A stretch of 64,000 nucleotides of DNA from Anolis carolinensis (lineage: Eukaryota). Each line of letters opens with the position of its first letter. The first letter of the stretch is position 1. The notes below the pieces were generated by a model, which saw only the letters and a list, made by a program, of their open reading frames with translations, made no database searches and had not been told where the DNA came from. Positions 9,482 through 59,300 of the stretch are shown here, piece by piece. The position numbers and the translations under genes are program-made. Location: NCBI RefSeq assembly GCF_035594765.1, contig NW_026943819.1, forward strand, positions 29,686,703 to 29,750,702. The letters are read 5' to 3'.

Positions 9482-10542
9482 CACACACACATATACATAT
9501 ATATATATATATACACAATATAATTTATAATAACTATAACATATATACGTATAATATTCATAATATTGTATTGTAATACGATATAATACTAATAATACAA
9601 TATAAGAATATTAATTATATATTTTACATGTAATATTACTAATAATATTACAATAAATTGATATAGTACAATATATTAATTTATTGCCAGTATTGCACTA
9701 TGCTAATAATATAATATTGTATGTAAATTTAATTTTTAAGCCGCTCTGAGTCCCCTTTGGGGTGAGAAGGGCAGCATATAAATGTAGCAAATAAATAAAT
9801 CATATATATATATATATATATATATCTCACGTCTGTTTTTCTCAATCATATCTATCATCTCTCTCTGTCATATCGAGGGCCATCTATATGGCTGGATGGC
9901 CATCTGTCAGGAGGGATTGAATGGTGTCTTCTTTTATGGCTGAAAAGGGGGCTGGATGGCCTTTGGGATTCCTTCCAACTCTAGTGTTCTATTATATGCT
10001 TATTATCTCTCTTTCAATCATATCTGTCTCAATTGTATGTATCATATCTATGGCTAGGTGGCCATCTGTCGGGAGGGATTGAATTGTGCCTTTCTTTATG
10101 TTGGAAGAGGGGTTAGACTGGATGGCCCTTGGGATCCCTTCCAACTCTAGGTTCTATAACACTTATCTATCATCTCCCTCAATCACATCTGGGGCCATCT
10201 ATCTATGGCTGGATGGCCATCTGTCGGGAGGGATCGAATGGTGTCTTCCTTTATGGCTGAAGCGGGGTTGGACTGCATAGCCTTTGGAGGTCCCTTCCAA
10301 CTCTTAGGGTTTTATTATATGCCCATCATGTATATCTCAATCTGTTATCATATCTATGGCGGGATGGCCATCTGTCGGGAGGGATCGAATGGCTGGGAAT
10401 CATAGCAGAAGAGGGTTGGATGGCCCTTGGGGGTTCTCTAACGTGTGGGAGGGGGGGTCGTTAACGGAACCGGAACCGGAACCGGGCTCCGTTTGTCCCC
10501 CGGACTCACCCGCAAGGCGGGACTCGACCAGGGCGCCGCCAT
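6240..10542 (-). CDS. MRPS24: Mitochondrial ribosomal protein S24 (uS3m), 4 coding exons, 173 aa
   Basis: Exons 10542-10510 ([11 protein letters not shown]), 8687-8595 ([15 protein letters not shown]), 8425-8314 ([33 protein letters not shown]) and 6523-6240 ([35 protein letters not shown]). All introns are GT-AG, phases are compatible, total 522 nt. The peptide is recognisable as MRPS24. Confidence 0.95.
6579..6930. mobile_element. Penelope-like element terminal repeats in inverted arrangement
   Basis: Minus copy at 6579-6682 abuts a plus copy at about 6700-6930. Both carry CACAACCTCTGAGG..GGAGAGAATGCTTCTGGAACATGGCC. Same family at 183-295, 20522-20657, 28268-29107 and 37305-37790. Confidence 0.7.
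7126..8277. mobile_element. Tc1/mariner-superfamily (Tc2/pogo-like) non-autonomous element
   Basis: TIR CCCTGTTTCCCTGAAAATAAGACA / TGTCTTATTTTCGGGGAAACAGGG with TA on both sides. It hosts a nested hAT. Confidence 0.8.
7301..8028. mobile_element. Non-autonomous hAT element (OC1/OposCharlie-like termini)
   Basis: Perfect 16-bp TIR CAGGGGTCCCCAAACT and 8-bp TSD CCATAGAT (7293-7300 and 8029-8036). Confidence 0.9.
9093..9437. mobile_element. Mariner/Tigger-like MITE
   Basis: TIR CAGTAGAGTCTCACTTA.. Other copies at 49354-49677 (TA TSD, complete), about 50394-50727 and 2062-2360 (truncated). Confidence 0.8.
9880..10440 (+). repeat. About four tandem ~155-bp units derived from the CR1 3' end
   Basis: ATGGCTGGATGGCCATCTGTCGGGAGGGAT..CCCTTCCAACTCTAG recurs at about 9887, 10049, 10205 and 10355. 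Confidence 0.75.
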
Positions 10543-10660
10543 CTTGGCCTGGGAATGTCGCGGGGGCGGGGCCGAGGCGCCAAGTCTCGCGAGAGGGAGA
10601 GAAGAAGGCGGCGGCGGCAATGGAGAACGGTGCAGGCGCGCCCCTAGTGGAGATTTGGAG
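10460..10660 (-). promoter_or_regulatory. MRPS24 CpG-island promoter
   Basis: CpG-rich. TCTCGCGAGA palindrome at 10585-10594, GC box GGGGCGGGG at about 10563-10571, YY1-type GCCGCCATCTT over the ATG, and repeated CCGGAA (ETS) at about 10463-10481. Confidence 0.75.
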
Positions 10661-21797: not shown

Positions 21798-24700
21798 TGC
21801 CAAAAGATCTCAGCCGGCATTTGGAAACAATAGACATTGACAAAATCACGATCTGTCAACTGCAAAAGGCCACCCTACTGGGATCTGCACATATCATCCA
21901 AAAATACATCACACAGTCCTAGACACTTGGGAAGTGTTCGACTTGTGATTTTGTGATATGAAATCCAGCATATCTATCTTGTTTGCTGTGTCATACAATA
22001 AAATAATAATAATAATCAGCTGGTGACCCAAAATGCAGACTGTGCAAGGAAGTTGACGAAACCATGGATCATATCCTCAGCTGCTGTAAGAAAATTGCAC
22101 AGACAGACTACAATCAGAGGCACAACTATGTGGCCCAAATGATTCATTGGAACTTATGCCACAAGTACCACCTCCCAGCAGCAAAGAACTGGTGGGATCA
22201 CAAACCTGCAAAAGTCTTGGAAAATGAGCACGCAAAGATACTGTGGGGCTTCCGAATCCAGACTGACAAAGTTATGGAACACAACACACCAGACATCACA
22301 GTTGTGGAAAAGAAAAAGGTTTGGATGATTTATGTTCATCCAGGTGACAGTCGCATTGACAAAAAACAAGAGGAAAAACTCAACCTCTTTGGAGAAGATT
22401 TTCCTGGGTTTAAAAGTTGTCTCGGGGCTGTCTGTTTTTATTGTTGTTTTTATTGTTATTTTAAAGCTAAGTGTATTGTTTTAATCTATTTCTGTAAACT
22501 GCTCCAAGCCAACCTGGGAGTAGCAGTATACAAGTCTAATAAATAAATAAAATAAATAATACGCCGGAAAATACGGTGCCCTCTCATAGTGAAAATTGCA
22601 ATAAAAAGAACCTTTGTTTTAAAAGTATTTGGCAGACAGCACACCTGGGCCAGGTGAGCTTTTGAGCCTGAAAGGAGGGATCCCAGGGGACTCCATCTCC
22701 CAAATGTCTGGATGTCGGGTTCACCAATGGGGAGCGCAAAGGGAGGGGGATACTGGGACTCACTGCTCTGGGAAGCTGGTGGCGTACTGGATCTTCTGGG
22801 TCATGGAGTCCTCGTCGCAGCCGGAGCTGGAGCAGACCCCGTTCATGCCTGGGACGGTGGAGAAGTTGTATCCGCCGGTGGTGACGAAGTAGGTGGGTGC
22901 GCCCACCATCAGGTACTGGTTCAGGGCCTGGAAGTACTGGAGCATGTAGGAGTCCTGGGGAGAGGCACAAGTGGGGCACACGTGGGACCGGGCCCAAGGG
23001 GTCAAGGTGGACGGGGGTGGTCCCAGAAGAGAGAAGCCCTCCTCACCTCGGGCACCGACAGCTCCTGCTCCAGCCCCACCTGGACGTTGAGCATGAAGAA
23101 GATGCCCACGCAGAACATGCCGGCAAAGAGCAGCACCTGCCGGGAGGAGAGGAAAGGGCTGCAGGTAAACACAACATGATGGACGGATAGATGGTCCCCT
23201 TATCCTCAACGTTGGGTTTCATCCCTGGACTGCACAAGCCTTCACTTCATCAAGTTCTTAGTACTCGATGAGTAGCTAGACTAGAGACAGGGCAAAGCTC
23301 AGGGTGAGCTCCTGTCCGTCAGCTCTAGTTCGCAGAGACACGAGAGAAGGCTCCCGGCTATCACATCTGGGCAATGTCCCCTGGGCAACGTCTCTGTAGA
23401 CAGCTAATTCTCTCACACCAGAAGCGACTTGCAGAATGTTCTCAATTTGGGTGAGCTCCTGCCTGTCAGCTCTAGCTTGCAGAGACACGAGAGAAGGCTC
23501 CCGGCTATCACATCTTGGCAATGTCCCCTGGGCAATGTCTCTGTAGACAGCTAATTCTCTCACACCAGAAGGGACTTGCAGAATGTTCTCAATTTGGGTG
23601 AGCTCCTGCCTGTCAGCTCTAGCTTGCAGAGACACGAGAGAAGACTCCCAGCTATCACATCTGGGCAATGTCCCCTGGGCAACGTCTCTGTAGACAGCTA
23701 ATTCTCTCACACCAGAAGCGACTTGCAGAATGTTCTCAATTTGGGTGAGCTCCTGCCTGTCAGCTCTAGCTTGCAGAGACACGAGAGAAGACTCCCAGCT
23801 ATCACATCTGGGCAATGTCCCCTGGGCAACGTCTCTGTAGACAGCTAATTCTCTCACACCAGAAGCGACTTGCAGAATGTTCTCAATTTGGGTGAGCTCC
23901 TGCCTGTCAGCTCTAGCTTGCAGAGACACAAGAGAAGCCTCCCAGCTATCACATCTGGGCAATGTCTCCTGGGCAACGTCTCTGTAGACAGCCAATTCTC
24001 TCACACCAGAAGGGACTGGAAGTAAGTTCTCAATTTGGGTGAGCTCCCGCCTGTCAGCTCTAGCTTGCAGAGACACAAGAGAAGCCTCCCAGCCATCACA
24101 TCTGGGCAATGCCCCCTGGGCAACGTCTCTGCAGACGTCCAATTCTCTCACACCAGAAACAATTTGCAGAATGTTCTCAAGTCGCTTCTGACACAATTTT
24201 TTAAAAATGTTGTTCTTTATGTAAAAGTGTAAAAGTTCTGATACCCTTTATCATACTGGAAAATAACAAAACGAATCTATGCCTTAAAGTTATTGAAAAC
24301 ATCTTCATAACAAACTCCGATCCCCCGACTCTCATGCCACCTGTTATACCCCCGCCCGCCTTGAATTTGGAGCCTGATCAGGAGCTGAATCCAGACATAG
24401 ATGAGGATTATTATGACTTTTCACCCAGTTCGGAAACCACTTTGCAGCTCCAGGTGCCTGGAGAAATCAGCCAGGAGGAGCAGTTAATTGGAAGGGAGGT
24501 TTCCTTGTCTGGGCCAGATGTTCCTGGTTCCCTTGAGAATGAGGGTTTTAATTGGAGAGAATTTGTGAGTCGGGAGAGGAGTTTCAAACAAAGTCTTCAC
24601 AGAAGTCAATGTCTGGCCTCCCAAGGGGATAATGGTTAAAGTTTCCCATGGGAACTTTTTGGGAGTATTGCTGTTTTTACTTGGGTTTCAGTTTAGAATC

Positions 24701-27700
24701 CTTAAAAGCGTTTTGCACTGTGGAATCTTTGCGGTGTCAACGTTGCTTCTTTGGAGAAAGGTGTCCCCGTAATTTGCTCCAGTTTCCAAGCCAAGTACTT
24801 CCCGTTCCAGTTGCAGTCGGGTTGAGTTAAACCACGACTCTGGAATAGACTCTACTTTTACTCCGGTTGTTATTTCCTTGTTCCTGTTTCAAGATTGCCT
24901 CCGCTTTGGCATCGTGTTGCCTTGATCGCTAAGAAGCATCGCCTGAGGATTGAACTCTGTTTTTGTCAGCCTTGTTTCCTTGTTGCATTTCATGGACTAG
25001 ATTGCTTGGGAGAGCTAACGAGCTCTCATTGTGGATTATAATTTCTGACCTTTCCTTCTACTCATCTGGGGTCACATTTGACTTTTCAGAAAGAACTATC
25101 TTCACCTCAAACTCTATAACTATTTTCATCTGGATTTATATTTGCTTTAATAAAGATATTAGATGTTATATTGGCTCCTGTCTGGTTTTCGAGTGCTCAC
25201 GCAGCCTTGGGGTGTAACACCACCCACCTCCCATTCCAGCCACAGCCTCTGCTCACCACCAGGAACCGGACGAAGCCGTTGAGCAGGACGGGCGCATAGA
25301 AGCGGCGCATGAAGGCCGGGAGGCGCGCCTCGTGCCGCTTCTCCTCGGGGGACCCTCCGTCCGGCTCCAGGCGGAAGCAGCAGCAGAAGTCCAGGCGGGA
25401 GTCCTGCAAAGGCCAAGCGGGTCAAGACGGGGCCACGGTCCGGCAAGAAGGCCTGAGGAGCCCTTCCCTGGGCCTGTCCCCTCCTCTCCTCACTGACCTC
25501 CTGCCGGCGGACGTCCAGGGCCAGGAGGGCCACAAAGGCCGACATCTGGAGCAGGAAGTCAAAGAGGACGGCCAGGGCGGCATAGAGGGCAAAGGTCTTG
25601 ACGGCCGGCATCGGGATCAGGGCTCCTGCAGCGGATGGACGGAGAGAGCGACAGAGGGGCCTCAGCGGAGGATGGGACTGCCAACTCTCTCGTGGTTGGC
25701 TATCTCCCTAAGCATGCGCTCGAGGTGCGTTAGGGATTCCTCTTCTTCAGAAGAGGAAGGGGAGCAGGAAAGTGGGCAGTTGGAATCTGAGGAGAAGATT
25801 TTGCAAGTACCCACATTTCAGGAGAGGCGAAAGGAAACAGAGCAGGGATGTCGTTCAGCTATAATAGCTGCCAGAAATGCAGCTGAGTAATTAGGAACTG
25901 CCCTGGCAGCTATAAAGGGCTATAAAGCAGAAGCAGGTGCAGACAGCTCTTGCTGGTAACAAACTGACTCTAATGCCTAAGCCTTCGCTCCCCGTGTGCC
26001 TGCTCCGAGTCTGCATCTGGGAAACTGCTCCTAAGGAATTAGTGTTACTTCTTGTTCTGTAGTAAGACTGCTATTTGATTTGGAAATTTACCAGAGACTA
26101 AGAACTGCGTTTCCCCTAAGACTTCCTTGCTTCATTTTGCATTATTCCACTGAGTGGGCTGTACTTTATGTTTTGCTGAAGTAAAGCAGTTTTCATTTAC
26201 TTGCCACAGTGTTTTAAGGCTGTTCTTCAAAGACAAAACAGGACAAGGTGGTGCAAGAGGCTCCCCACCCAACCACTCCTTCTGTTCTCACAACCCCGCT
26301 GTGAGCAGGTCAGTCCCAGTGAGGAAACAGGACCAGCTTGTTATTCTGTTTTGCAAATGCTTGCAAGGAAGGTTATGGCAACCGTTTTTTGGGACAGGAA
26401 AGGTGTACTTCTTGCAAAACCTTAGAAGAGGGATCCAGGACAAGCTTGGGGGAAAGTTGGGCGCATGCACATGCGCAGCTGCGAGAAGGGTTGAGGACGC
26501 AAGCCAAGCGGCAAAGTTTGGTGGGGAAGGACTTTCCAAACTCTTTTATCACTATGAGAAGTGCCTAGATTTCAATGGGGACTATGTTGAGAAGTGGTAT
26601 TTGGGTCTGGCTTTCAACTGCATATGGTAAATGTTTTCTCCTATACTTAGTTCATTTTTAATTCCAAAACGTAATCTACTTTCTGGATAGCCCTTGGAGT
26701 TACATAGAATCTGTATGTCTAAAAGTTGCTTTGTAAATGTTCTGATATGCCTTCTCAATCTGAAATTGCAATAAAAAGAACCTTTGTTTAAAAGGTATTC
26801 ATGACACAAGGTAGCCTTGAGCACGCAATGAGTGACCCAAATCTGGCAGCCCCAAAGCAGGCACCCCTCTCTCTCCCTTCCTTGCCATCAAAGTTGCCAA
26901 CAACAGGCTTCATGGGGCACCCTTGGCTATGCCCACCTCCATGGCTAAAGGCGCCAATTGCATGCACATACACACACCATTTGGCATGGAAGTGGCCCCG
27001 GAAGCGTCCTGACTCACCCAAGTAGAAGCAGATGACCTCCGAGAGGCTGCAGAGAAGCATGCTGGGTGCCACCTCTCCCAGGACCCTCCCGATTCGCTCC
27101 TCTATGGTCTCCCCCGGCTGGGGTTCGGCCCTCTGCAGAAAGAGAAGAAGAGAGTGTTAATGTTTTTGTGATATGGAGTGAAATGTTTAATCTACTGTTG
27201 CTGTGAAAGTGTATGTATTTCGTTCCTGCAAGCATTCCAGCAGACAAGAGGTTAATTGCAGCGAGCCCTGATTGATTGCTGGAAGGGCAAATGACAAATA
27301 CTTCCATTTGTGCTACGTGACAGGAAGATACATCACAGGCTGTGGATTGCAGAGGAGGTGATACTTTTCCCAAGATCATAATTTCTCCAAAAGGTTATGA
27401 TTTTTAACAAGTTGATACTTTCCCAAAGGTCATAATTTCTCCAAAAGGTTGTGATTTCTAACAAGGTGATACTTTTCCCAAGAACATAATTTCTCCAAAA
27501 GGTTATCATTTCCAACAAAGTGATACATTTCCAAAGATCATAATTTCTTCAAAAGATTATGATTTCTATCAAGGTGATGCCTTTCCAAAGATCATAATTT
27601 CTCCAAAAGGTTACGATTTCTAATAAGGTGATACTTTCCCCAAGATCATAATTTCTCCAAAAGGTTATGATTTCTAATAAGGTGATACTTTCCCCAAGAT

Positions 27701-30700
27701 CATAATTTCTCCAAAAGGCTATGATTTCTAACAAGGTGATACTTTTCCCAAGATCATTATTTCTCCAAAAGGTTATGATTTCCAACAAGGTGATACTTTT
27801 CCCAACATCGTAACTTCTCCAAAAGGTTATGATTTCTATCAAGGTGATACATTTCCAAAGGTCATAATTTCTCCAAAAGGTTATGGAGATTTCTCTTTTC
27901 CAAACTCCCGGCATGTTCCGCACCTGGTATTCCAGCACGAAGATGAAGATGTTGTCTGCGCCGAGGGCCAGGACCAGGAAGGGCACGACCTCGAGGATGA
28001 TGAGGGAGGAAGGCACCCCGATGTAGGAGTACAAGCCCAGCGAGGAGAGGACGGCTCCCAGCACCACCAGGATGCCCCCCAGGCCCAGCGTCACCTTGGA
28101 GTCCACCTGGGAGAAGCGGGAACGGGTTCAAGATGTGCACACACTCCTGGCCATTGGGACCCCGGGCACCCCTTCCTTCCTTCACCTCCCTTCCACACTG
28201 GTCTTTTCGGTCTCTCTATAGTTGAGTGAATGGCAAAATGTAATCTTTAGAGATTTTTCCTTTTGTGTTATTGAAGGCTTTCATGGCCGGAATCACTGGG
28301 TTGCTGTGAGTTTTCTGGGCTGCCTGGCATGTTCCAGAAGCATTCTCTCCTGACGTTTCGCCCACATATATGGCGAGGTGGCGAGGTCTGTTGGAAACTA
28401 GGCAAGTGGAGTTTATATATCTGTGGAATAATGTCCAGGGTGGGGTAAAGAATTCTCGTCTGTTGGAGGCAAGTGGGAATGTTGCCATTGGCCACCTTGA
28501 TTAGCATGGAATAGCCTTGCAGCTTCAAAGCCTGGCTGTTCCCTGCCTTGGGGAATCCTTTGTTGGGAAGTGTTAGCTGGCCCTGATTGTTTCCTGTCTG
28601 GAATTTGCCTGCTTTCAGAATGTTGTCGTTGGGGTTCTAGCTGCTTTCTGCCTGCGGGAATCCTTTGGTGAGAAGTGTTAGCTGGCTCTGATTGTTTCCT
28701 GTCTGGGATTCGCCTGCTTTCAGAATGTTGTCATTGGGGTTCGCGCTGCTTTCTGCCTGCGGGAATCCTTTGGTGAGTAGTGTTAGCTGGCCCTGATTGT
28801 TTCCTGTCTGGAATTCGCCTGCTTTCAGAATGTTGTCATTGGGGCTTGAGCTGCTTTCTGCCTGCGGGAATCCTTTGTTGGGAAGTGTTAGCTGGCCCTG
28901 ATTGTCTCCTGTCTGGAATTCCCGTTTTCTGAGTGTTGTTCTTTATTTACTGTCCTGATTTTGGAGTTTTTAAAATACTGGTACAGGTATATAAACCCCA
29001 CTTGCCTAGTTTCCAACAGACCTCACAACCTCTGACGATGCTTGGCATAGATGTGGGGGAAACGCCAGGAAAGAATGCGTCTGAAACATGGCCAGATAGC
29101 CCGGAAAAATCATTGATTGCTGGAAACTGAATGCTCTACTAAGCATTGTTTTTGCATTTTAAGATATCCTGAAATCTGGACGAGGGGCCCTTAACAGGTT
29201 TCTTGTCTGGACCCCCTCCCCTAACATGAATGGGACCCCTTCCTACCAGGACACGCCTGCACGTGGAGTACTGGCCCAGGGCCAGGGTTATGTAGACGAA
29301 GATCAGGAGGTAGCTGAGGCCGAAGATGGGCAGGTCCTCCCAGGTGGAGCGGCTGATCTCGTCCTCCAAGGAGCGCTGGAGAGGAAGGAAAAGGGAAGAG
29401 GAGGAGAACCACGTTGGAACGTGGTCAGTGCCGGGCCAGACGGAGGACATGCCGCCCTAGTTTCTCCTCGGTCCTTTGGGTTTCAGTGGGTCCCCTCTGA
29501 ACATGACTAAGACTAGGTCTTATAATAAGCTTATTTACATACAGTACATAGATAAATAGTACAATATAGTAACATACTGTATATACTCGAGTAAAAGCCT
29601 AGTTTTTCAGCCCTTTTTTTTAAGACTGAAAAAGCCCCCCTCGGCTTATGTTGGAGTATGTATGTATGTGTATGAAATGTGAATCAGGTGTTTCTGCTGT
29701 TTTGCAAGAGTGTGTGTTTCAGCAATGAAACAGTTAACAGCAGGCTGGTTTGACTGACAGCCTGCTATGACCTATCAGGCATGATTTCCGGCCTTTGGAG
29801 GTCGGACTGAGGAATGTGTTGTTCTTATCTCTGTGTGGAGCTGGTGCTTGCCGAGCGAAGAGGCTATAGAAGAGAAATGCCAGCTCAGAGCGCTGGCTTT
29901 TGCTATGCTTTGTAAATATGTATGAAATAAATGTTTGGACTTCAGACTACAGATGTGTTTGAGTCTGACCCCCCCCCCCCCCAAATTACCTCCGCCATGT
30001 AGGCGACGTTGTAGCGGTGGGCATGTTCCCTCTGGAATTCCTGCACGATCTTGAGGAACTGCTCCTCCCAGAGCATCACGAAGTCAAAGCGGGGGTCGCT
30101 GGAGGGGAAGTTGTTCAGGGAGACGGTCAGGATGAGGGCCTCCGCCCCGGAGTAGTCCAGCCCTGTGGGGCAGGCGGGAGGGTCAGCTGAGGAAATGCCA
30201 CCGGGATGTTGGTGAAGCTTCCCTAGAGATCTCTGGGGCTGCCCCTCTTGTGTTGGGTCTCCTTGTCCAGGCCCTTCTCCGGTTCAGGACCACGGACAGG
30301 TCTCCCTTCCGGCTTTCCTTCTCCTCCTGCTTCTATCTATCTCCTTATCCCAGATTATCTGATAGTGGAGACTCACAAAATCCAGTTTAAATCAGATAAT
30401 CTGGGATCAGATCCTAGGATATATATAGGGCAGCGTAGAAGGACCCGAGTCTCAGTGTAGACGGGGCCACGGGTGAAACCACCAGCTACAGAAGATCTTG
30501 CCGACTGGAAGGTTGACAGCTCAAGCCGTTTGTGGGTTGAGCTCCTGCTGTCAGCCTAGCTTCTGCCTACCTAGCAGTTCAAAAACAGCAATGATGGATC
30601 TGGACCAACCTTGCCATGGATAATGGGACTTGCAGTACCTTCACTGATACTGTGACTCCCCACCAACAATGGACTGGGACCAAACTGGGTACAGAGAAGC

Positions 30701-33700
30701 CCCATAACCAACTGAACATACTGCAGGGGTCAGTGGCAATGGACCTTGGTTTTGGGAGTTGCATCAAGAAAGCATCCAGAAAGCATGGTTTGGGGTGAGT
30801 GACCTCGGATCTGAGAGCTGTAGTTCACCCTTATCCAGACAGCCCTGAACCCAGCTGACAACGGATCTGGACCAAACTTGGCACACAGACCCAACATACA
30901 GGCCTGGTTTGGGGGTGAGTGACCTCAGATCGGGGAGCTGTAGTTCACCCTTATCCAGACAGCCCAGAACTCAGCCGACAATGGATCTGGACTAAACTTG
31001 GCACGCAGACCCAACATGGCCAACTGCGAGTACTGGCAGGGTTTTGGGGTGCTTGCCCTGGGAATCTGGGAGTTGCAGTTCACCCTTATCTGTGTGTACA
31101 GGCCTGGTTTGGGGATGAGTGACCTCGGATCTGGAAATTGTAATTCACCCTTATCCAGAGAGCCCTGAACCCAGCCAGAACCGGGCCGGGCCCACTTTCC
31201 TACCTGAGTAGCCCCCCACGGCCAGGAAAGGGAAGACGGGGGCCCCGTAGTCGGCCATGCAGCTCAGCCCCAGGGCCGTGATGTCCTTGAAGGAGAGCGG
31301 GGAGCTGTGGGCAGAGGAACACAGCCGTGGAGGTCAAGCCCACCCCAGGAGAGGACCTTCCGTGGCCCCTTCCTTCCTTCCTTCCTTCCTTCCTTCCTTC
31401 CTTCCTTCCTTCCTTCTGTCCTTCTCCATCCCACATCTCTCCCTCCGGAGCCACTTCCCAGTCTAACCCAGAGCCAGCCCAAGGTTCTGACGAGCAGTAG
31501 GCGAACAGAATTTTTGGTGCCCCCCAAACCTTTTAAAACATTATTTTTATTATATGTACTGCTGACTTGAAGGTGGGCACCGCAGGCAGAAATCAGCAAG
31601 ACGGTGAGCTCCGATCAGTCACCCCAGCACCTTGGCTGTTTCACATGGTGGCTGGCCTGCCTTTCGTCACGTGTCTCGAGCGAAGTTCCGCACATGCGCA
31701 GAGGAGTCCCATCGGCCATTTTAGGCAATGGGACTCATGCACATGCGCAAGGCTTTGCTCACTTGCTCACGCAATGACAAAAGGCACACAAGCCGCCCGT
31801 CCGCATGAGCGATGGAAGCCCTGCACATGCGCAAAGCAGTCCCATTGCTCAAAGTCGCCGATGGGACTCCTCTGCGCATGCGCAAGGCTTCTGAAGCCAA
31901 AAAAAGGATGGGAGATGCCTTACGTCACTGCGCAAGCGAGCGAAGCCCTGCGCATGCGCAAAGCAGTCCCATTGCCCAAAATGGCCAATGGGACTCTTCT
32001 GCGCATGTGCAAAGCTTCTGAAGCCAACAAAAGGATGGGAGATGACGCCTTACGTCACTGCGCAAGCGAGCAAAACCTTGCGCATGCGCAAAGCAGTCCC
32101 ATTGCCCAAAATGGCGGATGTGACTCCTCTGCGCATGCGCAAGGCTTCTGAAGCCGAAAAAAGGATGGGAGATGACGCCTTACGTCACTGCGCAAGCGAG
32201 CAAAACCCTGAGCATGCGCAAAGCAGTCTCATTGCCCAAAATGGCCGATGTGACTCCTCTGCGCATGCGCAAGGCTTCTGAAGCCGAAAAAAGGATGGGA
32301 GATGACGCCTTACGTCACTGCGCAAGCGAGCAAAACCCTGAGCATGCGCAAAGCAGTCTCATTGCCCAAAATGGCCGATGTGACTCCTCTGCGCATGCGC
32401 AAGGCTTCTGAAGCCGAAAAAAGGATGGGAGATGACGCCTTACGTCACTGCGCAAGCGAGCAAAACCCTGAGCATGCGCAAAGCAGTCCCATTGCCCAAA
32501 ATGGCCGATGTGACTCCTCTGCGCATGCGCAAGGCTTCTGAAGCCGAAAAAAGGATGGGAGATGACGCCTTACGTCACTGCGCAAGCGAGCAAAACCCTG
32601 AGCATGCGCAAAGCAGTCCCATTGCCCAAAATGGCCGATGTGACTCCTCTGCGCATGCGCAAGGCTTCTGAAGCCGAAAAAAGGATGGGAGATGACGGCA
32701 GGCAACAGCGGCACCACGTTTACACTGAGGCGCCTTGAGAGCGCCCCCTGTTGGCGTGCGCTACTGGTGTCTGCTTACTTCGCCTCGCAGTCGGGCCGCC
32801 TCTGGTCCGACCGAAGGGTCCTTGATCCCACAGGTACCCCCACCCCCAGGCTGCCCCCTCCTCTGCACTCACTTGATGCAGTAGAGGAAGTGGTCCCTCC
32901 AGTCGACGGTGCTGGTCTGACCCTTCAGCGTTTGGGTGGCGGTCATCTCCAGCCGCGTCCGGTTGTTCTGGAAGTACTGGAGGAGGCTGTTGAGGGCGCA
33001 GTCGGTCAGGGAGGGCTGCTGCGGGTTGAGCGGGGCGTAGCAGACGTCCTTCAGCGAGACGTTCCGCCCGTGGGCCTCCGACCAGACCACGATGCCCTGC
33101 AGCCGCTGCTGCAGCTCCAGCAGGTCCAGCAGCACCTCCATGGAGAGCACGCCGCTGAAGTTGCTCTGGCCCATCACCAGAGAGTTGTAGCTGTAGCCGG
33201 AACGGTTCCGGGCCGTCAGGAAGACCTGGTTGGTGCGGAAGAAGGGGCCGAAGTGCTCCTCGTAGAAGGCCTTCTCCTGCCGGGCCTGGCTGTCCGGGGC
33301 CGACCACAGCTCCACGGGGTTCGTGGTCATCTGGACGGAGGCCAGGCCGCTGGAGAGGACCACCACCACCAGGACACAGATGATGATGACCGTGCGCGGG
33401 TAGGAGGCCACCAGCGTGCCCCAGCTCCTGAAGACCCTGGACAGGAACCTGTCGGTGGCCCGGCCGATCTTCTGGGAACAAGGGAGCCTGGGCTGGGGCT
33501 CTTGAGGGCCTCCTGGCCCCGCCGTCTTCTCCCACGGCCCGCCCTGACCCTTGGACTTCCCTCGTGGTGACGAGGAGCAGCGCTGGCAGCTCAGGGCCAC
33601 CACGAAGAGAACGAAGAGGACCATGAAGAGCAGGAGGCAGAGGAAGAGGACTCCACTCAGGAGCCCAACCTGGAAGGGCGCTGCAGGAGGCCGCGGGGCC

Positions 33701-35422
33701 TCGATCGCCGGGCAAGATCGAGCGCAGTCCTGGCAGGAGCACTTCTCGCCGGTGCCGTTGCCCACGGGCTCCCCGCAGCTCCAGACTGTGGCGTTGAAGG
33801 GCACGATGCCACCCGCCGGGGCCGGGGAGCCCGGGGTCACCAGGCGGAAGTCGATGGCCAGCGGAGCCAGGCCGTTGCTGACGTCGCCCTGGTAGTCCAG
33901 CCACCGCTGGGTGTTGCAGAGAGTCGCCCCGTACTTGCCGCACATGGCGCCGACCGCGAAGCCACCCGTGGCCGGGATGCGCACGCCTTTGCAAGAGTCG
34001 TACGTGGCGTCCGCAAAGGCCTGGTCGTAGAAGCACTGGTACTCCAGGACGCCCAGCGCATGGCTGCCGTTGGAGAAAGTGTGGGCGAAGGTGCGGGTGA
34101 CGTTGGCGAAGAGACTCTGGTCCGGGGAGCAGATGTTCTGGCAGTGGAGGTTGCCGAAGTTCTCGGCGCAGGAGGGGCAGCGGGAGAGGATCACCCGCGA
34201 GACGCGCAGGCTGCTCTCGAGGGCGGACAGCTGGGCCTCCGAGCAGCAGGCGAAGGTGGAGTCCGTGCCCGTGAAGAGGACCGGGCAGACGCTGCGCAGG
34301 CGCTGCAGGTGGGACCCCGAGAGGAGGCGGGCCGGCGTGTTGGAGACGCAGGGGACCGTGTTGCCCTGAAGAAGGCTCCCGTTGACCTCGGGGTTCTTGC
34401 CGCAGTCGCCGTAGAAGGCGCAGTAGCCCTGGCGGTGGACCGGGGTGGCAGCCGCCGCCTGGGAGGGAAGGAGCGAGAGAAAAAGTCCATCCAACAAGCC
34501 TTCGACCATCTATATATATAAAAGAGTGATGGAATCCTGGCGACCCACAAAACAACAAAACTACAGGCCCCCCAACCTCGAAAATTGACAACACAACCCC
34601 TCATCCACGCCTCTAGGTTGATACAACAAAAAGAAAAGAAAAATAAAGTCCTCATTAGAGGGAGAGGAATAATTGTTTTTTATCCAATTGCTGCCAGTTA
34701 GAAGGCTAAGCTCTGCCCACTTGGTCTCCTAGCAACCTACTCAGCCCAGGGGACAGGCAAAGTTAGGCCTCACTTAGGCCTCTGTATTGCCTATAAAATA
34801 CAGACACCACCAGACAACGCCACAGCAACGCGTGGCCGGGCACAGCTAGTGTTTAATAATACTTATGAGGACCTTCAGATTCTCTAATAAGCCCTTTGCA
34901 GCTCGTATTTTATTATTTTTAACCGGCGGTTACTGTGAAGAGCCGGGCTGTGGCGCAGCTGGTTAGTAGCCAGCTGCAATAAATCACTACTGACCTGAGT
35001 TTGAACCCTGGGTCGGATTGAGTGCCCGACCATTAAATAGCCCCAGCTCGTTGTTGACCTAAGCAACCCGAAAGACTGTTGCATCTCTCAAGTAGTAGCC
35101 TCCAGTGGCCTAGGGGATAAAAGCTTCGTGACTTGAAAGTTGGGTTGCTGACCCGATTCTCTAATAAGCACTTTACAACTCTGAGATTGAATACCTACAG
35201 CTTTGAGGAGTTTCTGATTTTTGACTTCAATCAAAGCAGGCTCTTCACTTTGCTTTCCATATTCTGCCAGGGCATGTTCTTCTTCTTTGACGGCTTGTTT
35301 GACTTGTAAGAGTCCTCTGACCCCTGATCTTCTAGGCAGATATAGCCGGTCAACATCACTGCGAGGGTGCAGTGAATGATGAATGGTCATGAGTTTTCTT
35401 GTTTTTCTGTCCAAGTTGTCCA

Positions 35423-35918: not shown

Positions 35919-36482
35919 TATTATTTACTTGATTTATAGCCATTGTAGGTACTGGGATGTATAGTTCACCTACAATCAAAGAGCACTCCAATGATGGCCC
36001 TAGATCTAATATTTCCTACAGAACCCCCATGATCCACAAAACATGCAGGAGGTCTTTGGGGGAAATTTACCTTGATTTGGGGGAGTTGTAGTTCACCTAC
36101 ACCCAGAGAGCACTGTGAACCCAAACACCGATGCGTATGGACCCAACTTGGCACTCATACCTGATATGCTGACATTTGATTACTGCAGGGGTTTAGTGGG
36201 AAATGACCTTCCTTTCTGGGAGTTGTAGTTAACAGAGGAATCGATCAGCAACTGAACAAGAGGTTAGGGGAGAATTCACCATGATTTACAGGAGTTGTAC
36301 TTGACCGACATCCAGAGAGCACTGTTCATCCAACCAATGATGGATCTGGACCAACCTTGCCATGGATAATGGGACTTGCAGTACCTTCACTGATACTGTG
36401 ACTCCCACCAACAAGACCCCAGACTCACCAGTGCTGCGTGGGCCCGGACCAGCACCAAGGCCAGGAGGGTGGCACTCAGCAT
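14091..36482 (-). CDS. NPC1L1: NPC1-like intracellular cholesterol transporter 1, 19 coding exons, 1330 aa
   Basis: Exons 36482-36429, 34458-32873, 31304-31204, 30162-29990, 29375-29247, 28106-27924, 27132-27018, 25625-25498, 25403-25257, 23136-23047, 22954-22764, 21188-21061, 20915-20789, 19135-19080, 18877-18727, 17734-17503, 15705-15592, 15432-15270 and 14215-14091. All are GT-AG and in frame (3993 nt). Signal peptide, Cys-rich NTD ([14 protein letters not shown]), [11 protein letters not shown], sterol-sensing domain ([23 protein letters not shown]) and RND-like C-terminal TMs are present. Exon structure and neighbours DDX56/TMED4 fit NPC1L1 rather than NPC1. Confidence 0.97.
14271..15110 (+). 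mobile_element. LTR-like element (TGTTGG..CCAACA) in the last NPC1L1 intron
   Basis: Inverted termini, TATAAAA and AATAAA are present. Internal blocks are repeated at 15805-16610 and 17180-17307, and a related 5' part lies at 29649-29965. No TSD found. Confidence 0.5.
19237..20135 (+). mobile_element. Solo LTR (Gypsy-like) inserted in a Sauria SINE
   Basis: TG..CA termini and 5-bp TSD ATTTC (19232-19236 and 20136-20140). The SINE resumes seamlessly on both sides. Confidence 0.88.
21352..22383. mobile_element. Cluster of R4/Dong fragments in both orientations around a (TTA)n/(TAA)n tract
   Basis: Minus copy at 21352-21637; plus copies at 21796-22000 and 22017-22383. The latter has the CCHC finger ([18 protein letters not shown]), RHN and PD..D motifs. 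Confidence 0.75.
23304..24194 (+). repeat. 6 x 147-bp tandem array derived from a retroposon 3' region
   Basis: GTGAGCTCC starts at 23304, 23451, 23598, 23745, 23892 and 24039. Only the last unit finishes with the stem-loop partner AAGTCGCTTCTGACAC. Confidence 0.85.
24342..25219 (+). mobile_element. Solo LTR (Gypsy-like)
   Basis: TGTTATACCCC..GGGGTGTAACA termini, 5-bp TSD CCACC, and AATAAA near the 3' end. Confidence 0.88.
26330..26693 (+). mobile_element. Decayed mariner transposase fragment with 3' TIR
   Basis: [17 protein letters not shown] (mariner catalytic-domain motif); ends ..CTTTCTGGATAGCCCT. Confidence 0.65.
27356..27884. repeat. 54-bp minisatellite, about 10 copies
   Basis: Unit AGGTGATACTTTTCCCAAGATCATAATTTCTCCAAAAGGTTATGATTTCTAACA. 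Confidence 0.9.
28268..29107. mobile_element. Penelope-like element: long minus copy with internal 105-bp tandem repeats plus inverted short plus copy
   Basis: Units GGGAATCCTTTG.. start at 28551, 28656, 28761 and 28866. The inverted terminal copy spans about 28985-29107. Confidence 0.7.
31689..32697. repeat. 130-bp CpG-rich tandem array (about 6.8 units) preceded by an inverted partial unit
   Basis: GATGACGCC starts at 32041, 32171, 32301, 32431 and 32561. The segment 31689-31767 is the reverse complement of part of the unit. Confidence 0.92.
34509..34849 (+). mobile_element. Non-autonomous Helitron
   Basis: A|TC...CTAG|T junctions, no TSD, subterminal hairpin GCCAC(AGCAACGC)GTGGC. Confidence 0.85.
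35190..35880 (-). mobile_element. R4/Dong internal fragment plus three 3'-UTR pieces separated by (TTA)n
   Basis: [34 protein letters not shown] (RT C-terminal region). Repeated GGACACTTCCCAAGTGTCTA 3' units at about 35482, 35635 and 35783. Confidence 0.65.
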
Positions 36483-36499
36483 CCTGGCACTCTCTCAGC

Positions 36500-36670
36500 C
36501 CGGTGTCGAGAGGCAGCTGTGGTCCGATGCGCCCGCAGAGGCCAAAGGACGCGCCAGGGAGCCTGTCCTCGGCCCACCTGCTTTCCAGGTAGCAGCAGCA
36601 GCAGCCCTGGTCCGACAGCCCAGAAACCAATCAGGTGCCGCCAGGAATGTAAATAATTAACACACCTGGA
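36500..36670 (-). promoter_or_regulatory. NPC1L1 proximal promoter with HNF1 site
   Basis: GTTAATTATTTAC on the minus strand (36649-36661) matches the HNF1 consensus. CCAAT at about 36627 and DR1-like AGGCCA-A-AGGACG at about 36539-36551, just upstream of the ATG. Confidence 0.6.
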
Positions 36671-38604: not shown

Positions 38605-39283
38605 TAGCTGTGCCCGGCCACGCATTGCTGTAGCGTAGTCCTAAGTGGGGTTTTCTTCATGGCATTCAAGGTGGCCTAGAAAGGATTCCCCTAGGTATGA
38701 AGCAGGCAGGCTTTGAAGCTGCAAGGCTATTCAATGGCATTCAAGTTGGGTAACAATGGAGTCCCCTAGGTATGAAGCAGCCAGGCTTTGAAGCTGCAAG
38801 GCTATTCAATGGCATTCAAGCTGGGTAACAATGGAGTCCCCTAGGTATGAAGCAGCCAGGCTTTGAAGCTGCAAGGCTATTCAATGGTATTCAAGTTGGG
38901 TAACAATGGAATCCCCTAGGTAGGAAGCAGCCAGGCTTTGAAGCTGCAAGGCTACTCAACGGTATTAAAGTTAGGTAACAATGGAGTCCCCTAGGTATGA
39001 AGCAGCCAGGCTTTGAAGCTACAAGGCTATTCAATGGTATTCAGTTGGCCAATAATGGAGTCCCTTAGGTATGAAGCAGCCAGGCTTTGAAGCTACAAGG
39101 CTATTCAAGTTGGCCAACAATGGGATTTTTTTGGCCTTGTCTCTGTTTTCTTTCTTTTTCTTTTCTGATGGGTCACCCCTTGGAAAGTGATTAGTTTTGT
39201 GGCCAAATCTGGTGTGATTTGGCCCAGGGGTTTTGTTGTTAACTCGGTCCTAATTATTCACATTACATAGTTAGATAGATAGA
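38605..39283 (-). mobile_element. Helitron-like element carrying a 75-bp tandem array
   Basis: Helitron 3' end (TAGCTGTGCCCGGCCACG). Units CCCCTAGGTATGAAGCAGCCAGGCTTTGAAGC at 38688, 38763, 38838, 38913, 38988 and about 39062. Confidence 0.6.
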
Positions 39284-55131: not shown

Positions 55132-58100
55132 CTAAACCAACTTCTTGGCCTCGAAGAAGCTCTTGAGGTGCCTCATCTGCCAGATGCCCGTCAGGATGAG
55201 GATGACCGTCTGGGCGATGGACCACCACAGCACCCGCTGGTTGGTGCTCTCGCTGGTCATGCGGAAACGCTCCTCCCGGTACTGCAAAGCAGATGTGGAC
55301 AAAATATTAAAAATTAACTAGGTATTTTTAATTACAAAAATGTGAGTCAAGCACTGAAAGGGTTAAATGGATGCCATGACTCAGCAAAAGCAGCAGTTCA
55401 ATATAAGCATCTGAAAACTTGGATGTTCACAGGTGCCTTCTCAGAACTGATAGTTGATTGTCCATGTGCTTTACCTAGGCCTTGGCCATCCCATGCACTC
55501 TATTACCTTTAGTGGTTCTCATCCCTAATCACCAAAGAATATGCATTTTCAGATTTCCATTCTCCTTAAAATGGCCCATGGCCTTTGGTGCTTGACCACG
55601 GATTGGAACTACTGTCTATTTTTTAAGTTATTTTAACTTTTGTAAGATGTGTTATTATATTGTGATTTTATTGTATTACTGTTTTTATTGATATAATACT
55701 GCTTTGGGCTTGTCCCAGTGTAAGCCGCCCCGAGTCCTTTGGGAGATGGAGCAGGGTATAAATAAAGTTTTATTATTATTTTTATTATTAAGTATTATTA
55801 TTATTAGAAGCAGGTGTGCCTGTAGCTTAGTAGGCCTCATTGTGATAGAAGCCTCAGTATGAGTTGGCCTTAGTGTGAGAAGCTTTGGTGAGAGAAGTCC
55901 CAGGTTGAAGACCTCATGTGTGAAGCTCCAGTGTGAAGACTGCTGTGTGTAAAGCTACTATGTGAAGCTCCTGCCTAAGTTTGTTGTGAGAGGAGGCTCT
56001 GTGAGAGCAAAGCTAGAAGCTGTTCATCTGCATGAGAAAGAAGCCCAATGTAGAAGCAAAGAAGGAAGTATAAAGTATTTTATTTGTATTGTGGAAACCT
56101 TGTTTTTTGTAAATAGTGCCACCATATTATTTTGCTACAAAGAAAAGCCTCCAAAGGAAGAGATGACATTGGTCTGTGTTTTTGTTCTTTTTATCACTTT
56201 TGGCTACTGGTGTTGGGTCACGCTGCTGCTAATAAGTTACTCTGCTGTATGTTTATGGGGAGGGTCTTTTGTTAATAAGCCCACTCGCCCAACAAGGTGA
56301 ACTCTGTCATCAAGGGAACAGCAGACCAGCCCTCTCCACAGGCCACCAATCAGACCCCAAATAGCCAGACCCAGCTCCTGCCTGGGCCTAGGAACTGTGT
56401 AGTTCACAGGGCCCTGGTTTTTCCCTGCTGCTTCACTTTCGGGGCCTCTCCCGACTCACCCTTTGGTAGTTCTGCTCCTTCTGGATCTGCTCCACTTGGT
56501 CCAGGAGCTGCCTGGCCCTCAGCTGCAGCTCCGTCAACTTGTCCTTAGCCGCAATCTCCGGGTAGTTGTTGGCGTGCTCCCCGACCTGCAGATCTAGGTG
56601 GACGCGCTGCGGAGGCACAAGGAGAAAGAGCAGAAAAAGAAAGAAGAGAATAGGAGGAAGACAAAAAGGAGGAGAAGAGGAAGGAGAAGGAAGAGGTGAA
56701 AGGAGGAAGAGGAGAAAGAAGGAGAAGAGGGAGGAAAATGGGAAGAAAGAGAAGGAGGGGGAGAAGGGGGAGAAGGAAGAAGTAGGAGAAGCAGAAGAAA
56801 AGAGGAAGAAGGAGAAAGAGAAGAGGAAGGAGAGGAAGGAGAAGAGTAGAAGAGGAAGATGAGGAGGAAGGAGGAAAAGTGGAAGGCGAAAAAGAGGAAG
56901 AGAAGAGGAAGGAGAAGAAGTGTCAGGGAAAATTACCCAAAAATAGCAGAGCATTCAAAAATATAAACAGGTTACTAATAATAGCATTTAGCATTTAGCT
57001 CACAGCGAGCATAGTGTGAAGTGCCAGGTGGCTGTAAATAATCTCGAGCTTAGGAAGCAAAAATGCAGAGTCCAATCTTAAAAACCACGAAAGGTTTATT
57101 TACAACAAGAGGAAAAGGAATGAGAATATGAAACCTGCCTTGAATCAACCAGACCCCCATGCCCCTGCCCTCGCTTTCCGCAGCCCCTCACTCACCAGAG
57201 TGCCGCCTGCGAAGAGGGCCAGCCGCGTGGAGTTGGAGTGGAGGCAGAGCTGGTGCTCCCCAGGCGTGTGGGAGGTGAAGGTGAAGCGCCCCTCCGAGCC
57301 ATACTGCCGCGAGAGGACCACCTGCAACAAAGGGGGAGGATGGAGGGGGAGCTGTTGGACTTTGGCCCCAGGAGCCCCTCTCTTGCCCTCCTTTCCTTAT
57401 AATCATTATTATTAATATTACTAATATTTTGGTATTACAGTTTATGTCTGTGNNNNNNNNNNNNNNNNNNNNNNNNNNNNNNNNNNNNNNNNNNNNNNNN
57501 NNNNNNNNNNNNNNNNNNNNNNNNNNNNNNNNNNNNNNNNNNNNNNNNNNNNNNNNNNNNNNNNNNNNNNNNNNNNNNNNNNNNNNNNNNNNNNNCCCAC
57601 ATTTTTATTGTTATAATCATTATTATTATTATTATTATTAATATTTTGGTATTACAGTTTATGTCTGTGTCCCTAAATATTTTTAATTATTATTATATTA
57701 CAGTTTATGTTTGTGTCCCCAAGTATTATTATTCTTATTATATTATAGCGTACGTCTGTGTCACAAATTATTATTATTATAATCATTATTATTAATATTA
57801 CTATTATTTTGGTATTACAGTTTATGTCTGTGTCCCTAAATGTTTTTATTGTTGTTGTTGTTATTATCATTATTATACTACAGTTTATGTTTGTGTCCCT
57901 AAATGTTTTTATTGTTGTTGTTATGATTAACATTATTATTATATTAGTTTATGTCTGTGTCCCCAAGTATTATTATATTATCGTTTATGTCTGTGTTCCA
58001 AAATATTATTATATTATAGCGTATGTCTGTGTCCCAAATTATTATTATTATTATCATTATTATTACTAATATTATTATTATTTTGGTATTACAGTATATG

Positions 58101-59130: not shown

Positions 59131-59300
59131 GGACGACGCCGCCTCCTTCGCCTCAGCCGCCGCGCATGCGCAGCCGGGGAGCTGTGGGGGAAAAAAAAAC
59201 CAATCAGGGCAGCTCCGCGCATGCGTGGTTGGCTGCGCGGCCGCCCCGCCCACCGGAAGAGCGCCTCACGAAGGGGAGGGGGACCGCCAAGCCTCCGCTA
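58740..59300 (-). promoter_or_regulatory. TMED4 CpG-island promoter
   Basis: NRF1-like GCGCATGCG at about 58953, 59162 and 59217; CCAAT at 59200; CCGGAAG at 59253; several CCCCGCCCC GC boxes in intron 1 and at the start of intron 2. Confidence 0.7.

What the first reader, a model, noticed from the sequence alone, without database searches (positions are those of the whole stretch)
31689..32760. Promoter-motif satellite in NPC1L1 intron 2: NRF1/YY1/CRE array with inverted unit and CTCF boundary
Seen: about 6.8 x 130-bp units hold eight perfect TGCGCATGCGCA palindromes (31873, 31949, 32079, 32130, 32260, 32390, 32520, 32650) plus near matches. Each unit also has AAAATGGC(C/G)G and TGACG-n5-CGTCA/TTACGTCA. 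An inverted partial unit at 31689-31767 can fold back on the array, and CCAACAGGGGGCGC (minus strand, 32741-32754) lies between the array and exon 2. CpGs are intact although nearby repeats show CpG decay. Established: these are NRF1, YY1, CREB/ATF and CTCF consensus motifs, and NRF1, CREB and CTCF binding is methylation-sensitive. Inference: a copy-number-variable, methylation-switchable intragenic promoter or enhancer in a tissue-specific gene, perhaps acting on nearby housekeeping genes or making antisense or N-terminally truncated transcripts. I do not recognise the unit as a known repeat.
Basis: partly seen in the sequence, partly recalled or inferred. Interest (0 to 1): 0.72.

Follow-up and report, generated by a model that had tools for sequence, protein, structure and literature searches.

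The report
CpG-rich palindromic minisatellite in NPC1L1 intron
A short intron of a lizard cholesterol-transporter gene holds a real, recently grown tandem array of a 130-base unit whose many promoter-type motifs are copies of one small mirrored piece; nothing yet shows that it acts as a switch.

Summary
A 130-bp x 6.8 array lies at 31819-32697 (96% matches). It has eight perfect TGCGCATGCGCA sites at the stated coordinates, an inverted older unit at 31665-31790 and one CTCF-like 14-mer at 32741-32754.

The array fills two thirds of a 1,562-bp intron of NPC1L1 (minus strand), 170 bp from the donor of the first coding exon. The one orthologous contig that spans this intron has about 330 bp there and no such motif.

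Each unit is a roughly 77-nt palindrome (NRF1 site, YY1-like centre, NRF1 site) plus a 50-nt spacer. Unit identity rises from about 80% on the left to 100% on the right. The motif count is therefore copying by descent.
- Four of the sixteen NRF1 slots carry CpG-decay changes.
- Four carry one inherited C-to-A change.
- The CTCF-like match is within chance for the window.

Best reading: a lineage-specific minisatellite built by inverted plus tandem duplication of a CpG-rich seed, possibly an old foldback-like transposon. CpG retention in the old units keeps an unmethylated "orphan CpG island" state open.

Earlier notes of this scan report comparable NRF1-motif arrays and a CpG-rich hairpin transposon elsewhere in this genome, which those notes call green anole.

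The parts
31307..32868 (-). NPC1L1 intron that holds the array (1,562 bp)
   Evidence: tblastn of squamate and bird NPC1L1 proteins places exons at 34464-32872 and 31306-31196. The donor GTGAGT lies directly after ...FLYCIK. The orthologous intron in L001 is about 330 bp.
32869..34509 (-). First coding exon of NPC1L1 (546 codons, start codon at 34509)
   Evidence: ORF list. Pfam NPC1_N E 1.7e-67 and NPC1_MLD E 1.8e-35. Best relatives are squamate NPC1L1 at 59-65% identity.
31196..31306 (-). Next NPC1L1 exon ([35 protein letters not shown])
   Evidence: tblastn. blastn to L001 2355-2463 at 88%.
31368..31424 (.). (CCTT)n microsatellite in the same intron; no link to the array shown
   Evidence: TRF period 4, 14.2 copies. 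Similar runs occur elsewhere in the window.
31665..31790 (-). Old inverted unit, head-to-head with the array
   Evidence: blastn: unit positions 4-97 match 31785-31690 at 80.6%. Alignments. It differs from the inferred ancestor by 5 CpG transitions.
31791..31913 (+). Oldest direct unit (about 80% identical to the young units)
   Evidence: Identity matrix.
31914..32043 (+). Second direct unit (91%); carries the best-preserved 77-nt palindrome at 31942-32018
   Evidence: Identity matrix. DNA fold -30.3 kcal/mol, z -9.3, 0 of 200 shuffles as good.
32044..32697 (+). Five young units (97-100% identical; the last is cut at GATGACG)
   Evidence: The palindrome is degraded here (z -3.6). The first NRF1 slot reads TGAGCATGCGCA in four of the five units.
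31645..31668 (-). Short stretch outside the inverted unit that resembles, in reverse complement, the stretch just outside the right end of the array
   Evidence: Alignment anchored at a GACG start that I chose: score 14, 0 of 1000 shuffles reach it. An unanchored local alignment is not significant: 19 against 16.8 +/- 2.2. Inconclusive.
32694..32719 (+). Partner of 31645-31668; possible right terminus of a foldback-like insertion
   Evidence: The flanking GTTTCAC / GTTTACAC could be a decayed target duplication or more inverted repeat. Inconclusive.
32741..32754 (-). Single CTCF-like 14-mer
   Evidence: One match in the window; 0.13 expected; 12 of 100 shuffles have at least one.

Best explanation
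This is a lineage-specific, recently expanded minisatellite, not a selected regulatory device.

Proposed history (inferred from structure, not observed):
1. A CpG-rich seed of about 130 bp became a roughly 77-bp palindrome by inverted (fold-back, template-switch) duplication of an arm of about 38 bp. The arm carried one NRF1-type site beside a YY1-like centre.
2. The unit (palindrome plus a 50-bp spacer with two CRE half-sites) was copied once in inverted orientation.
3. It was then copied head-to-tail by unequal exchange or replication slippage. The newest copies are at the exon-proximal end.

The dense NRF1, YY1-like and CRE motifs are therefore identical by descent. Any factor binding or unmethylated state would be a by-product of CpG density. 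Shown here: the structure, the age gradient, the motif decay, and the absence of the array from the orthologous intron of one other squamate.
For: - Array and palindromes are real.
- The unit is a palindrome plus spacer. The older unit folds at -30.3 kcal/mol (z -9.3) and young units at z -3.6.
- Identity rises stepwise from left to right: about 80, 91, 97-98, 99.2 and 100%.
- Of 16 NRF1 slots, 8 are perfect and 5 of those lie in units 97-100% identical. Four imperfect slots are CpG-to-TpG/CpA changes. Four are one C-to-A change inherited by copying.
- Unit 31914 has 3 CpG transitions among 7 changes (Fisher p 0.055).
- The intron is 1,562 bp here against about 330 bp, with no NRF1 10-mer, in the orthologous contig L001. 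Three further sauropsid contigs show no NRF1 10-mer near the exon end.
- About 14 other minisatellites lie in the same 64 kb, so tandem amplification is routine in this region. SINE-derived satellites are described as abundant in green anole (PMC10702118).
- No second copy of the unit or its flanks is in the window. Translated units have no relatives in 5.8 billion proteins on either strand. There are no Pfam or Rfam matches.
Against: - CpG density is exceptional: 6.7 per 100 bp and o/e 0.88, the highest of 14 arrays.
- It remains about 0.8-0.96 in the two oldest units. Those units are 20-25% diverged, so youth alone does not explain it.
- The adjoining exon has CpG o/e 0.76 against 0.52 in the orthologue.
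- Together these fit a germline-unmethylated island, which could carry activity.
- The origin of the CpG-rich seed is unknown.
- No methylation, transcript or population data could be consulted.
Confidence: 0.55

Rival explanations
1. Remnant of a non-autonomous foldback- or MITE-like DNA transposon, about 31645-32719 (1,075 bp). Its two arms each carried the palindromic unit, and the right arm later expanded in place. It would be similar in kind to the 'CpG-rich hairpin transposon with promoter motifs' that this scan noted in another gene of this genome.
For: - Head-to-head arrangement of the inverted unit and the array, with a centre of symmetry near 31787.
- About 22-25 nt just outside both ends align in inverted orientation when anchored at the unit ends (0 of 1000 shuffles).
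- GTTTCAC and GTTTACAC abut the two ends.
- Removing 1,075 bp leaves an intron of about 490 bp, close to the 330 bp of the orthologue.
- A CpG-rich seed is what a young mobile element would bring.
I did not check that note.
Against: - The unanchored alignment of the flanks is not significant, and the anchor was chosen by eye.
- The putative target duplication needs an indel and can equally be read as more inverted repeat.
- No other clean direct repeat flanks the structure.
- There is no second copy in 64 kb and no translated relatives.
- No look-alike appears in the scan's index, although a blank there means little.
Confidence: 0.25
2. One reading: a working intragenic orphan CpG island. NRF1, YY1 and CREB/ATF binding keeps it unmethylated, and it acts as an alternative or antisense promoter, an enhancer or, with CTCF, a boundary. 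Its strength would scale with copy number.
For: - There are 8 perfect and 7 near-perfect NRF1 palindromes in 1 kb.
- Classic CpG-island criteria are met: GC 0.55-0.57, o/e 0.79-0.96 over about 1 kb.
- CpG is retained in old units, and the adjacent exon is CpG-enriched relative to its orthologue.
- Lizard non-methylated islands have mammal-like CpG o/e with lower GC (PMC3583005).
- A plus-strand CAG|GTACCC donor-like site lies 137 bp downstream of the array at 32834/32835.
Against: - No direct data of any kind.
- Motifs decay and the decayed versions are propagated.
- The array is absent from the other squamate contigs examined.
- The YY1 and CRE matches are partial, and the CTCF motif is at chance level.
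- PMC3583005 states that computational CpG-island criteria predict non-methylated DNA poorly in cold-blooded vertebrates.
- The genuine NRF1-type promoter in the window (p24/TMED first exon, about 59.1-59.3 kb) is 26.5 kb away and unrelated in sequence.
Confidence: 0.15
3. Assembly artefact: the number of identical units (pairs at 100%) is mis-estimated or the array is mis-joined.
For: Units 32174 and 32304 are 100% identical to each other, as are units 32434 and 32564. Arrays like this are hard to assemble.
Against: The diverged older units, the inverted unit and the unique junctions on both sides show the locus itself is real. Only the copy number could be wrong. There is no N run nearby; the nearest is 57453-57595.
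Confidence: 0.05

Closest known systems
Intronic GC-rich minisatellites / VNTRs of vertebrates
   Same: Head-to-tail units of tens to about 150 bp, very high identity between neighbouring units, an age gradient along the array, an intronic site, and expected length polymorphism.
   Different: The unit is itself a 77-nt palindrome packed with housekeeping-promoter motifs, and it is much more CpG-dense than the other 13 arrays in the window.
Monomer arrays of rodent LINE-1 5' UTRs (own knowledge: about 200-bp monomers with YY1 sites; promoter strength rises with monomer number)
   Same: Tandem CpG-rich promoter-motif units with a YY1-type core; the motif array could in principle drive transcription.
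   Different: There is no LINE body. The array sits between two exons 170 bp and about 510 bp away, with no room for ORF1/ORF2, and there is no reverse-transcriptase or other Pfam match.
CpG-rich macrosatellites DXZ4 / D4Z4 (own knowledge: CTCF- and YY1-bound, methylation-dependent chromatin states)
   Same: A tandem CpG-island-like repeat with YY1- and CTCF-type motifs and a possible epigenetic switch.
   Different: About 25-fold smaller unit, only about 1 kb in total, no ORF, a single CTCF-like motif outside the array, and no chromatin data.
SINE-derived satellites of squamates (sSat; PMC10702118)
   Same: Same host lineage. Units of 67-145 nt are amplified in place from a piece of a mobile element, and longer arrays are more homogeneous.
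   Different: No tRNA-like or SINE feature was found in the unit (ARAGORN, Rfam).
Foldback transposons / hairpin MITEs, and the 'CpG-rich hairpin transposon with promoter motifs' noted by this scan (s1-517360)
   Same: Inverted arms built from repeated sub-units, nested palindromes, and promoter-like motifs multiplied by copying one short piece back and forth.
   Different: Mobility is not shown here: no clean target duplication and no second copy. ETS and Sp1 motifs, reported for the other element, were not seen in the unit sequence (no dedicated motif search).

Membership tests
Minisatellite / VNTR | Head-to-tail repeats of a unit of 10 to a few hundred bp | tested here: met
   Period 130, 6.8 copies, 96% matches, no indels. 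Spacing is exactly 130.
Minisatellite / VNTR | Copy number varies between individuals | not testable with these tools
CpG island (sequence definition) | At least 200 bp, GC at least 0.5, CpG o/e at least 0.6 | tested here: met
   31665-32697: GC 0.55-0.57, o/e 0.79-0.96.
Non-methylated island / promoter | Unmethylated DNA and transcription start sites in vivo | not testable with these tools
   No reads could be laid. Public green-anole Bio-CAP (GSE43512) and RNA-seq (GSE41338) exist according to PMC3583005.
LINE 5' monomer promoter array | Array lies at the 5' end of a LINE body with ORF1/ORF2 | tested here: not met
   Exons lie 170 bp to the right and about 510 bp to the left of the direct array. 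ORFs in and around it have no Pfam match.
Foldback / MITE-type DNA transposon | Terminal inverted repeats | tested here: inconclusive
   The inverted unit is 80% identical to the array units. The extra 22-25 nt match only in an anchored test, not in an unanchored one.
Foldback / MITE-type DNA transposon | Target-site duplication | tested here: inconclusive
   GTTTCAC against GTTTACAC at the putative ends. No exact flanking repeat of 8 bp or more at sensible positions.
Foldback / MITE-type DNA transposon | Multiple dispersed copies in the genome | not testable with these tools
   No copy in the 64-kb window. No eukaryotic genome search is available. Translated-unit searches and a metagenome pattern scan were blank.
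SINE-derived satellite (sSat) | Unit derived from a Squam SINE (tRNA-related head or body) | tested here: inconclusive
   No tRNA-like hit and no Rfam family, but the SINE consensus sequences were not at hand.
CTCF boundary element | CTCF core motif beyond chance, and occupancy | tested here: not met
   One match; 0.13 expected; 12% of shuffles have at least one. Occupancy is not testable.

The most novel reading that the evidence does not exclude
The array is one instance of a genome-wide habit in this lizard. NRF1-type palindromic promoter pieces are mirrored and amplified into small 'portable CpG islands' that stay unmethylated on their own. In that case the array would create a new intragenic promoter, or a seed of unmethylated DNA, inside a tissue-specific gene, and the raised CpG content of the neighbouring exon would be its footprint.
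Probability: 0.12. Interest if true: 0.65.

Novelty: new member of a known kind. Interest (0 to 1): 0.3.

Why it matters
If it is only a minisatellite, the lesson is a caution for motif-based readings. Dense "regulatory grammar" can arise from copying one 38-bp arm back and forth, so motif counts in repeats are not independent evidence.

If the array turns out to be unmethylated and transcribed, it would be a dated, lineage-specific birth of an orphan CpG island next to a non-CpG-island gene. Its unit number should vary naturally, which would make it a convenient system for asking how many NRF1 sites and how much CpG density are needed to keep DNA unmethylated in a cold-blooded vertebrate.

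It could also affect NPC1L1 splicing. Every unit carries acceptor-like and donor-like signals in the sense strand.

Tried and rejected
- **LINE 5' monomer array or LTR with enhancer repeats.** Rejected: the intron is only 1.56 kb, exons flank the array closely, and there is no coding capacity.
- **tRNA-, SINE- or snRNA-derived unit.** No ARAGORN hit and no Rfam hit at gathering score. At E up to 1 there are only generic hairpin-like matches to miRNA precursor models far below threshold.
- **Target-site duplications.** Only short, low-complexity or indel-bearing candidates.
- **Long terminal inverted repeats beyond the unit.** Not significant without anchoring.
- **Other copies.**
  - None in the window.
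  - Exact look-up of eight ORFs was blank, but the references included the stop codon, so this blank is weak.
  - Translated units on both strands have no relatives.
  - A metagenome scan with a 21-nt core pattern was blank.
  - The scan's own index was blank by sequence and by relatives.
- **Orthologous introns.**
  - Only distant squamate or sauropsid contigs were reachable (exon DNA identity 74-86%). Their introns do not align.
  - The Candoia aspera protein could not be traced to DNA.
- **Literature.** Nothing on NRF1 tandem arrays in Anolis, and no foldback elements described for it. The run that gave L001 is not named in any searchable paper.
- **Limits kept.** The N run at 57453-57595 was left alone.
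Full report
**What is there**

Tandem Repeats Finder reports one array at 31819-32697 with period 130, 6.8 copies, 96% matches and no indels. The repeat finder gives exact 130-bp spacing. Shuffles of the window give 0.04 matches on average.

The other motifs are present as described:
- AAAATGGC(C/G)G occurs five times, plus one inverted copy.
- TGACG-n5-CGTCA occurs five times.
- TTACGTCA occurs six times.

They are weaker than their names suggest. Only one copy comes within two mismatches of the extended YY1 consensus. There is no full CRE. The CTCF-like 14-mer at 32741-32754 is the only one in the window, but 0.13 are expected and 12 of 100 shuffles contain at least one.

**Gene context**

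The minus strand carries NPC1L1.
- The 546-codon ORF at 32869-34509 begins with the start codon and signal peptide. It matches Pfam NPC1_N and NPC1_MLD.
- Its closest relatives within the search's length limits are squamate NPC1L1 fragments at 59-65% identity.
- tblastn places the next exon at about 31196-31306.
- The array therefore lies in a 1,562-bp intron (31307-32868), 170 bp from the donor, and fills two thirds of it.
- Whether this is 'intron 2' depends on an upstream non-coding exon that I did not look for.

Earlier notes of this scan call the genome green anole. I could not verify the species myself.

**Anatomy of the unit**

Each unit consists of an imperfect palindrome of about 77 nt and a spacer of about 50 nt. 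The palindrome reads NRF1 site, then AGTCCCATTG, a YY1-like centre, CAATGGGACT, then a second NRF1 site. The spacer holds a second small palindrome made of two CRE half-sites.
- The palindrome is best preserved in an older unit at 31942-32018: -30.3 kcal/mol as DNA, z -9.3, and none of 200 shuffles folds as well.
- It is degraded in the young units (z -3.6).
- So the two NRF1 sites per unit are mirror copies of one arm.

Left of the array lies a complete but old unit in inverted orientation at 31665-31790. It is 80% identical to the unit over 98 nt. It can pair with the first direct unit.

**Age gradient and motif fate**

Identity to the youngest units rises from left to right:

| Unit | Identity to youngest units |
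|---|---|
| Inverted unit | about 73% |
| 31784 | about 80% |
| 31914 | 91% |
| 32044 | 97-98% |
| Last four units | two identical pairs differing by one base |

Growth, or homogenisation, has therefore been most recent at the exon-proximal end.

Of the 16 NRF1 slots:
- Eight are perfect, and five of those lie in units 97-100% identical to each other.
- Four imperfect slots are CpG-to-TpG/CpA changes (31690, 31738, 31822, 32000).
- Four are one and the same C-to-A change (TGAGCATGCGCA), copied along with its unit.

In unit 31914, three of seven changes are CpG transitions, although CpG sites are 14% of the unit (p 0.055). I see no sign that the motifs are protected. A unit with one site destroyed was the one that was amplified.

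**Comparison with relatives**

The only orthologous DNA I could reach came from Logan contigs of unnamed sauropsids.
- In L001 the two exons align at 85-88% nucleotide identity. The intron between them is about 330 bp, does not align, and has no NRF1 10-mer even at one mismatch.
- L003 shows 574 bp of intron without the motif. L002, L005 and L006 reach less than 130 bp past the exon.
- The array is thus an addition in the lineage of this genome. Without it the intron would be about 490-530 bp.

**Is it a dispersed repeat?**

What I could do was all blank:
- No second copy of the unit or of either flank in the 64-kb window.
- Translated units on both strands find nothing among 5.8 billion proteins, which include ORF calls on Logan contigs.
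- A 21-nt core pattern is absent from the metagenome collection.
- No tRNA, Rfam or Pfam match.

These blanks argue weakly against a high-copy family.

On the other side, the structure is foldback-like.
- The stretches just outside both ends (31645-31668 and 32694-32719) align in inverted orientation when anchored at the unit ends (0 of 1000 shuffles).
- GTTTCAC and GTTTACAC abut them.
- However, the unanchored alignment is not significant, I chose the anchor by eye, and the 'duplication' can equally be read as more inverted repeat.

I rate a transposon origin of the seed at about one in four. Earlier notes of this scan describe a young 'CpG-rich hairpin transposon with promoter motifs' and several NRF1-motif minisatellites elsewhere in this genome. 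I could not compare sequences, so these notes are leads only.

**The CpG question**

The array is the most CpG-dense of the 14 minisatellites in the window, at 6.7 CpG per 100 bp and o/e 0.88. The others have 0-4.2 per 100 bp.
- For the five young units, youth is a sufficient explanation.
- For the two oldest units it is not. They are 20-25% diverged yet keep o/e 0.8-0.96. In the well-aligned core of the inverted unit, CpG sites changed only modestly more often than other sites.
- The adjacent coding exon has o/e 0.76 (GC 0.67) against 0.52 (GC 0.61) in L001. The region upstream of the start codon is CpG-poor.

This pattern would fit a germline-unmethylated island covering the array and the exon.

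It is not proof. Long et al. (PMC3583005) show that sequence criteria predict non-methylated DNA poorly in cold-blooded vertebrates. The same paper provides green-anole testis and liver maps that would answer the question directly.

**Mechanism I commit to**

With confidence about 0.55, this is a by-product of DNA-level copying:
1. Fold-back or template-switch duplication made the palindrome and the inverted unit.
2. Unequal exchange or slippage then added 130-bp units.

The window shows about 14 other minisatellites, so this kind of amplification is routine here. TE-derived satellites are documented for green anole (PMC10702118). The motif richness is inherited from one CpG-rich seed of unknown source. 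A working promoter or enhancer gets 0.15, a transposon-borne origin 0.25, and an assembly problem limited to copy number 0.05.

**What could not be done**

I did not resend or trim the request, so no read depth, transcript or polymorphism evidence exists here.
- The N run at 57453-57595 was left untouched.

Noticed in passing
window 5852-62941 (arrays listed): About 14 separate minisatellite arrays with periods of 45-340 bp lie in 64 kb, several of them in NPC1L1 introns. Examples: 23302-24180 (147 bp x 6.0, 95%), 28543-28939 (105 x 3.8) and 38659-39108 (75 x 6). Only the array studied here is CpG-dense.
   Followed up: partly
window 27356-27885: A 54-bp x 9.8 array starts right at the donor side of the NPC1L1 sterol-sensing-domain exon (tblastn 27882-28106). 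It extends the exon's reading frame as a 185-codon ORF (27549-28106, minus strand).
   Followed up: no
window 58957-59300: First exon of a p24/TMED-type gene on the minus strand ([11 protein letters not shown]...[25 protein letters not shown]; Pfam EMP24 E 0.0035). Its CpG-rich promoter carries CGCGCATGCGCA at 59161, a CCAAT box and Sp1-like boxes. This is a genuine NRF1-type housekeeping promoter 26.5 kb from the array and is unrelated to it in sequence.
   Followed up: partly
window 32044-32697, minus strand: In the gene-sense strand every unit carries an acceptor-like CTCCCATCCTTTTTTCGGCTTCAG and, 94 nt further on, a donor-like GAC|GTAAGG. The array therefore offers a series of potential 94-nt pseudo-exons 170 bp downstream of the real donor.
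   Followed up: no
window 32869-34509 versus L001 460-2028: The first coding exon of NPC1L1 is richer in GC and CpG here (GC 0.67, o/e 0.76) than in the orthologous squamate contig (0.61, 0.52). The 500 bp upstream of the start codon are CpG-poor (o/e 0.48).
   Followed up: partly
window 10535-10615: A perfect extended YY1 consensus AAGATGGCGGC (minus strand) and two near matches lie in a kilobase with raised CpG (o/e 0.64). This could be another promoter-like spot or a repeat.
   Followed up: no
window 30580-31220 and 36286-36630: Copies of a dispersed repeat (with the motif GAGCTGTAGTTCACCC, in partial 120-bp tandem form at 30786-31017) flank the exon at 31196-31306.
   Followed up: no
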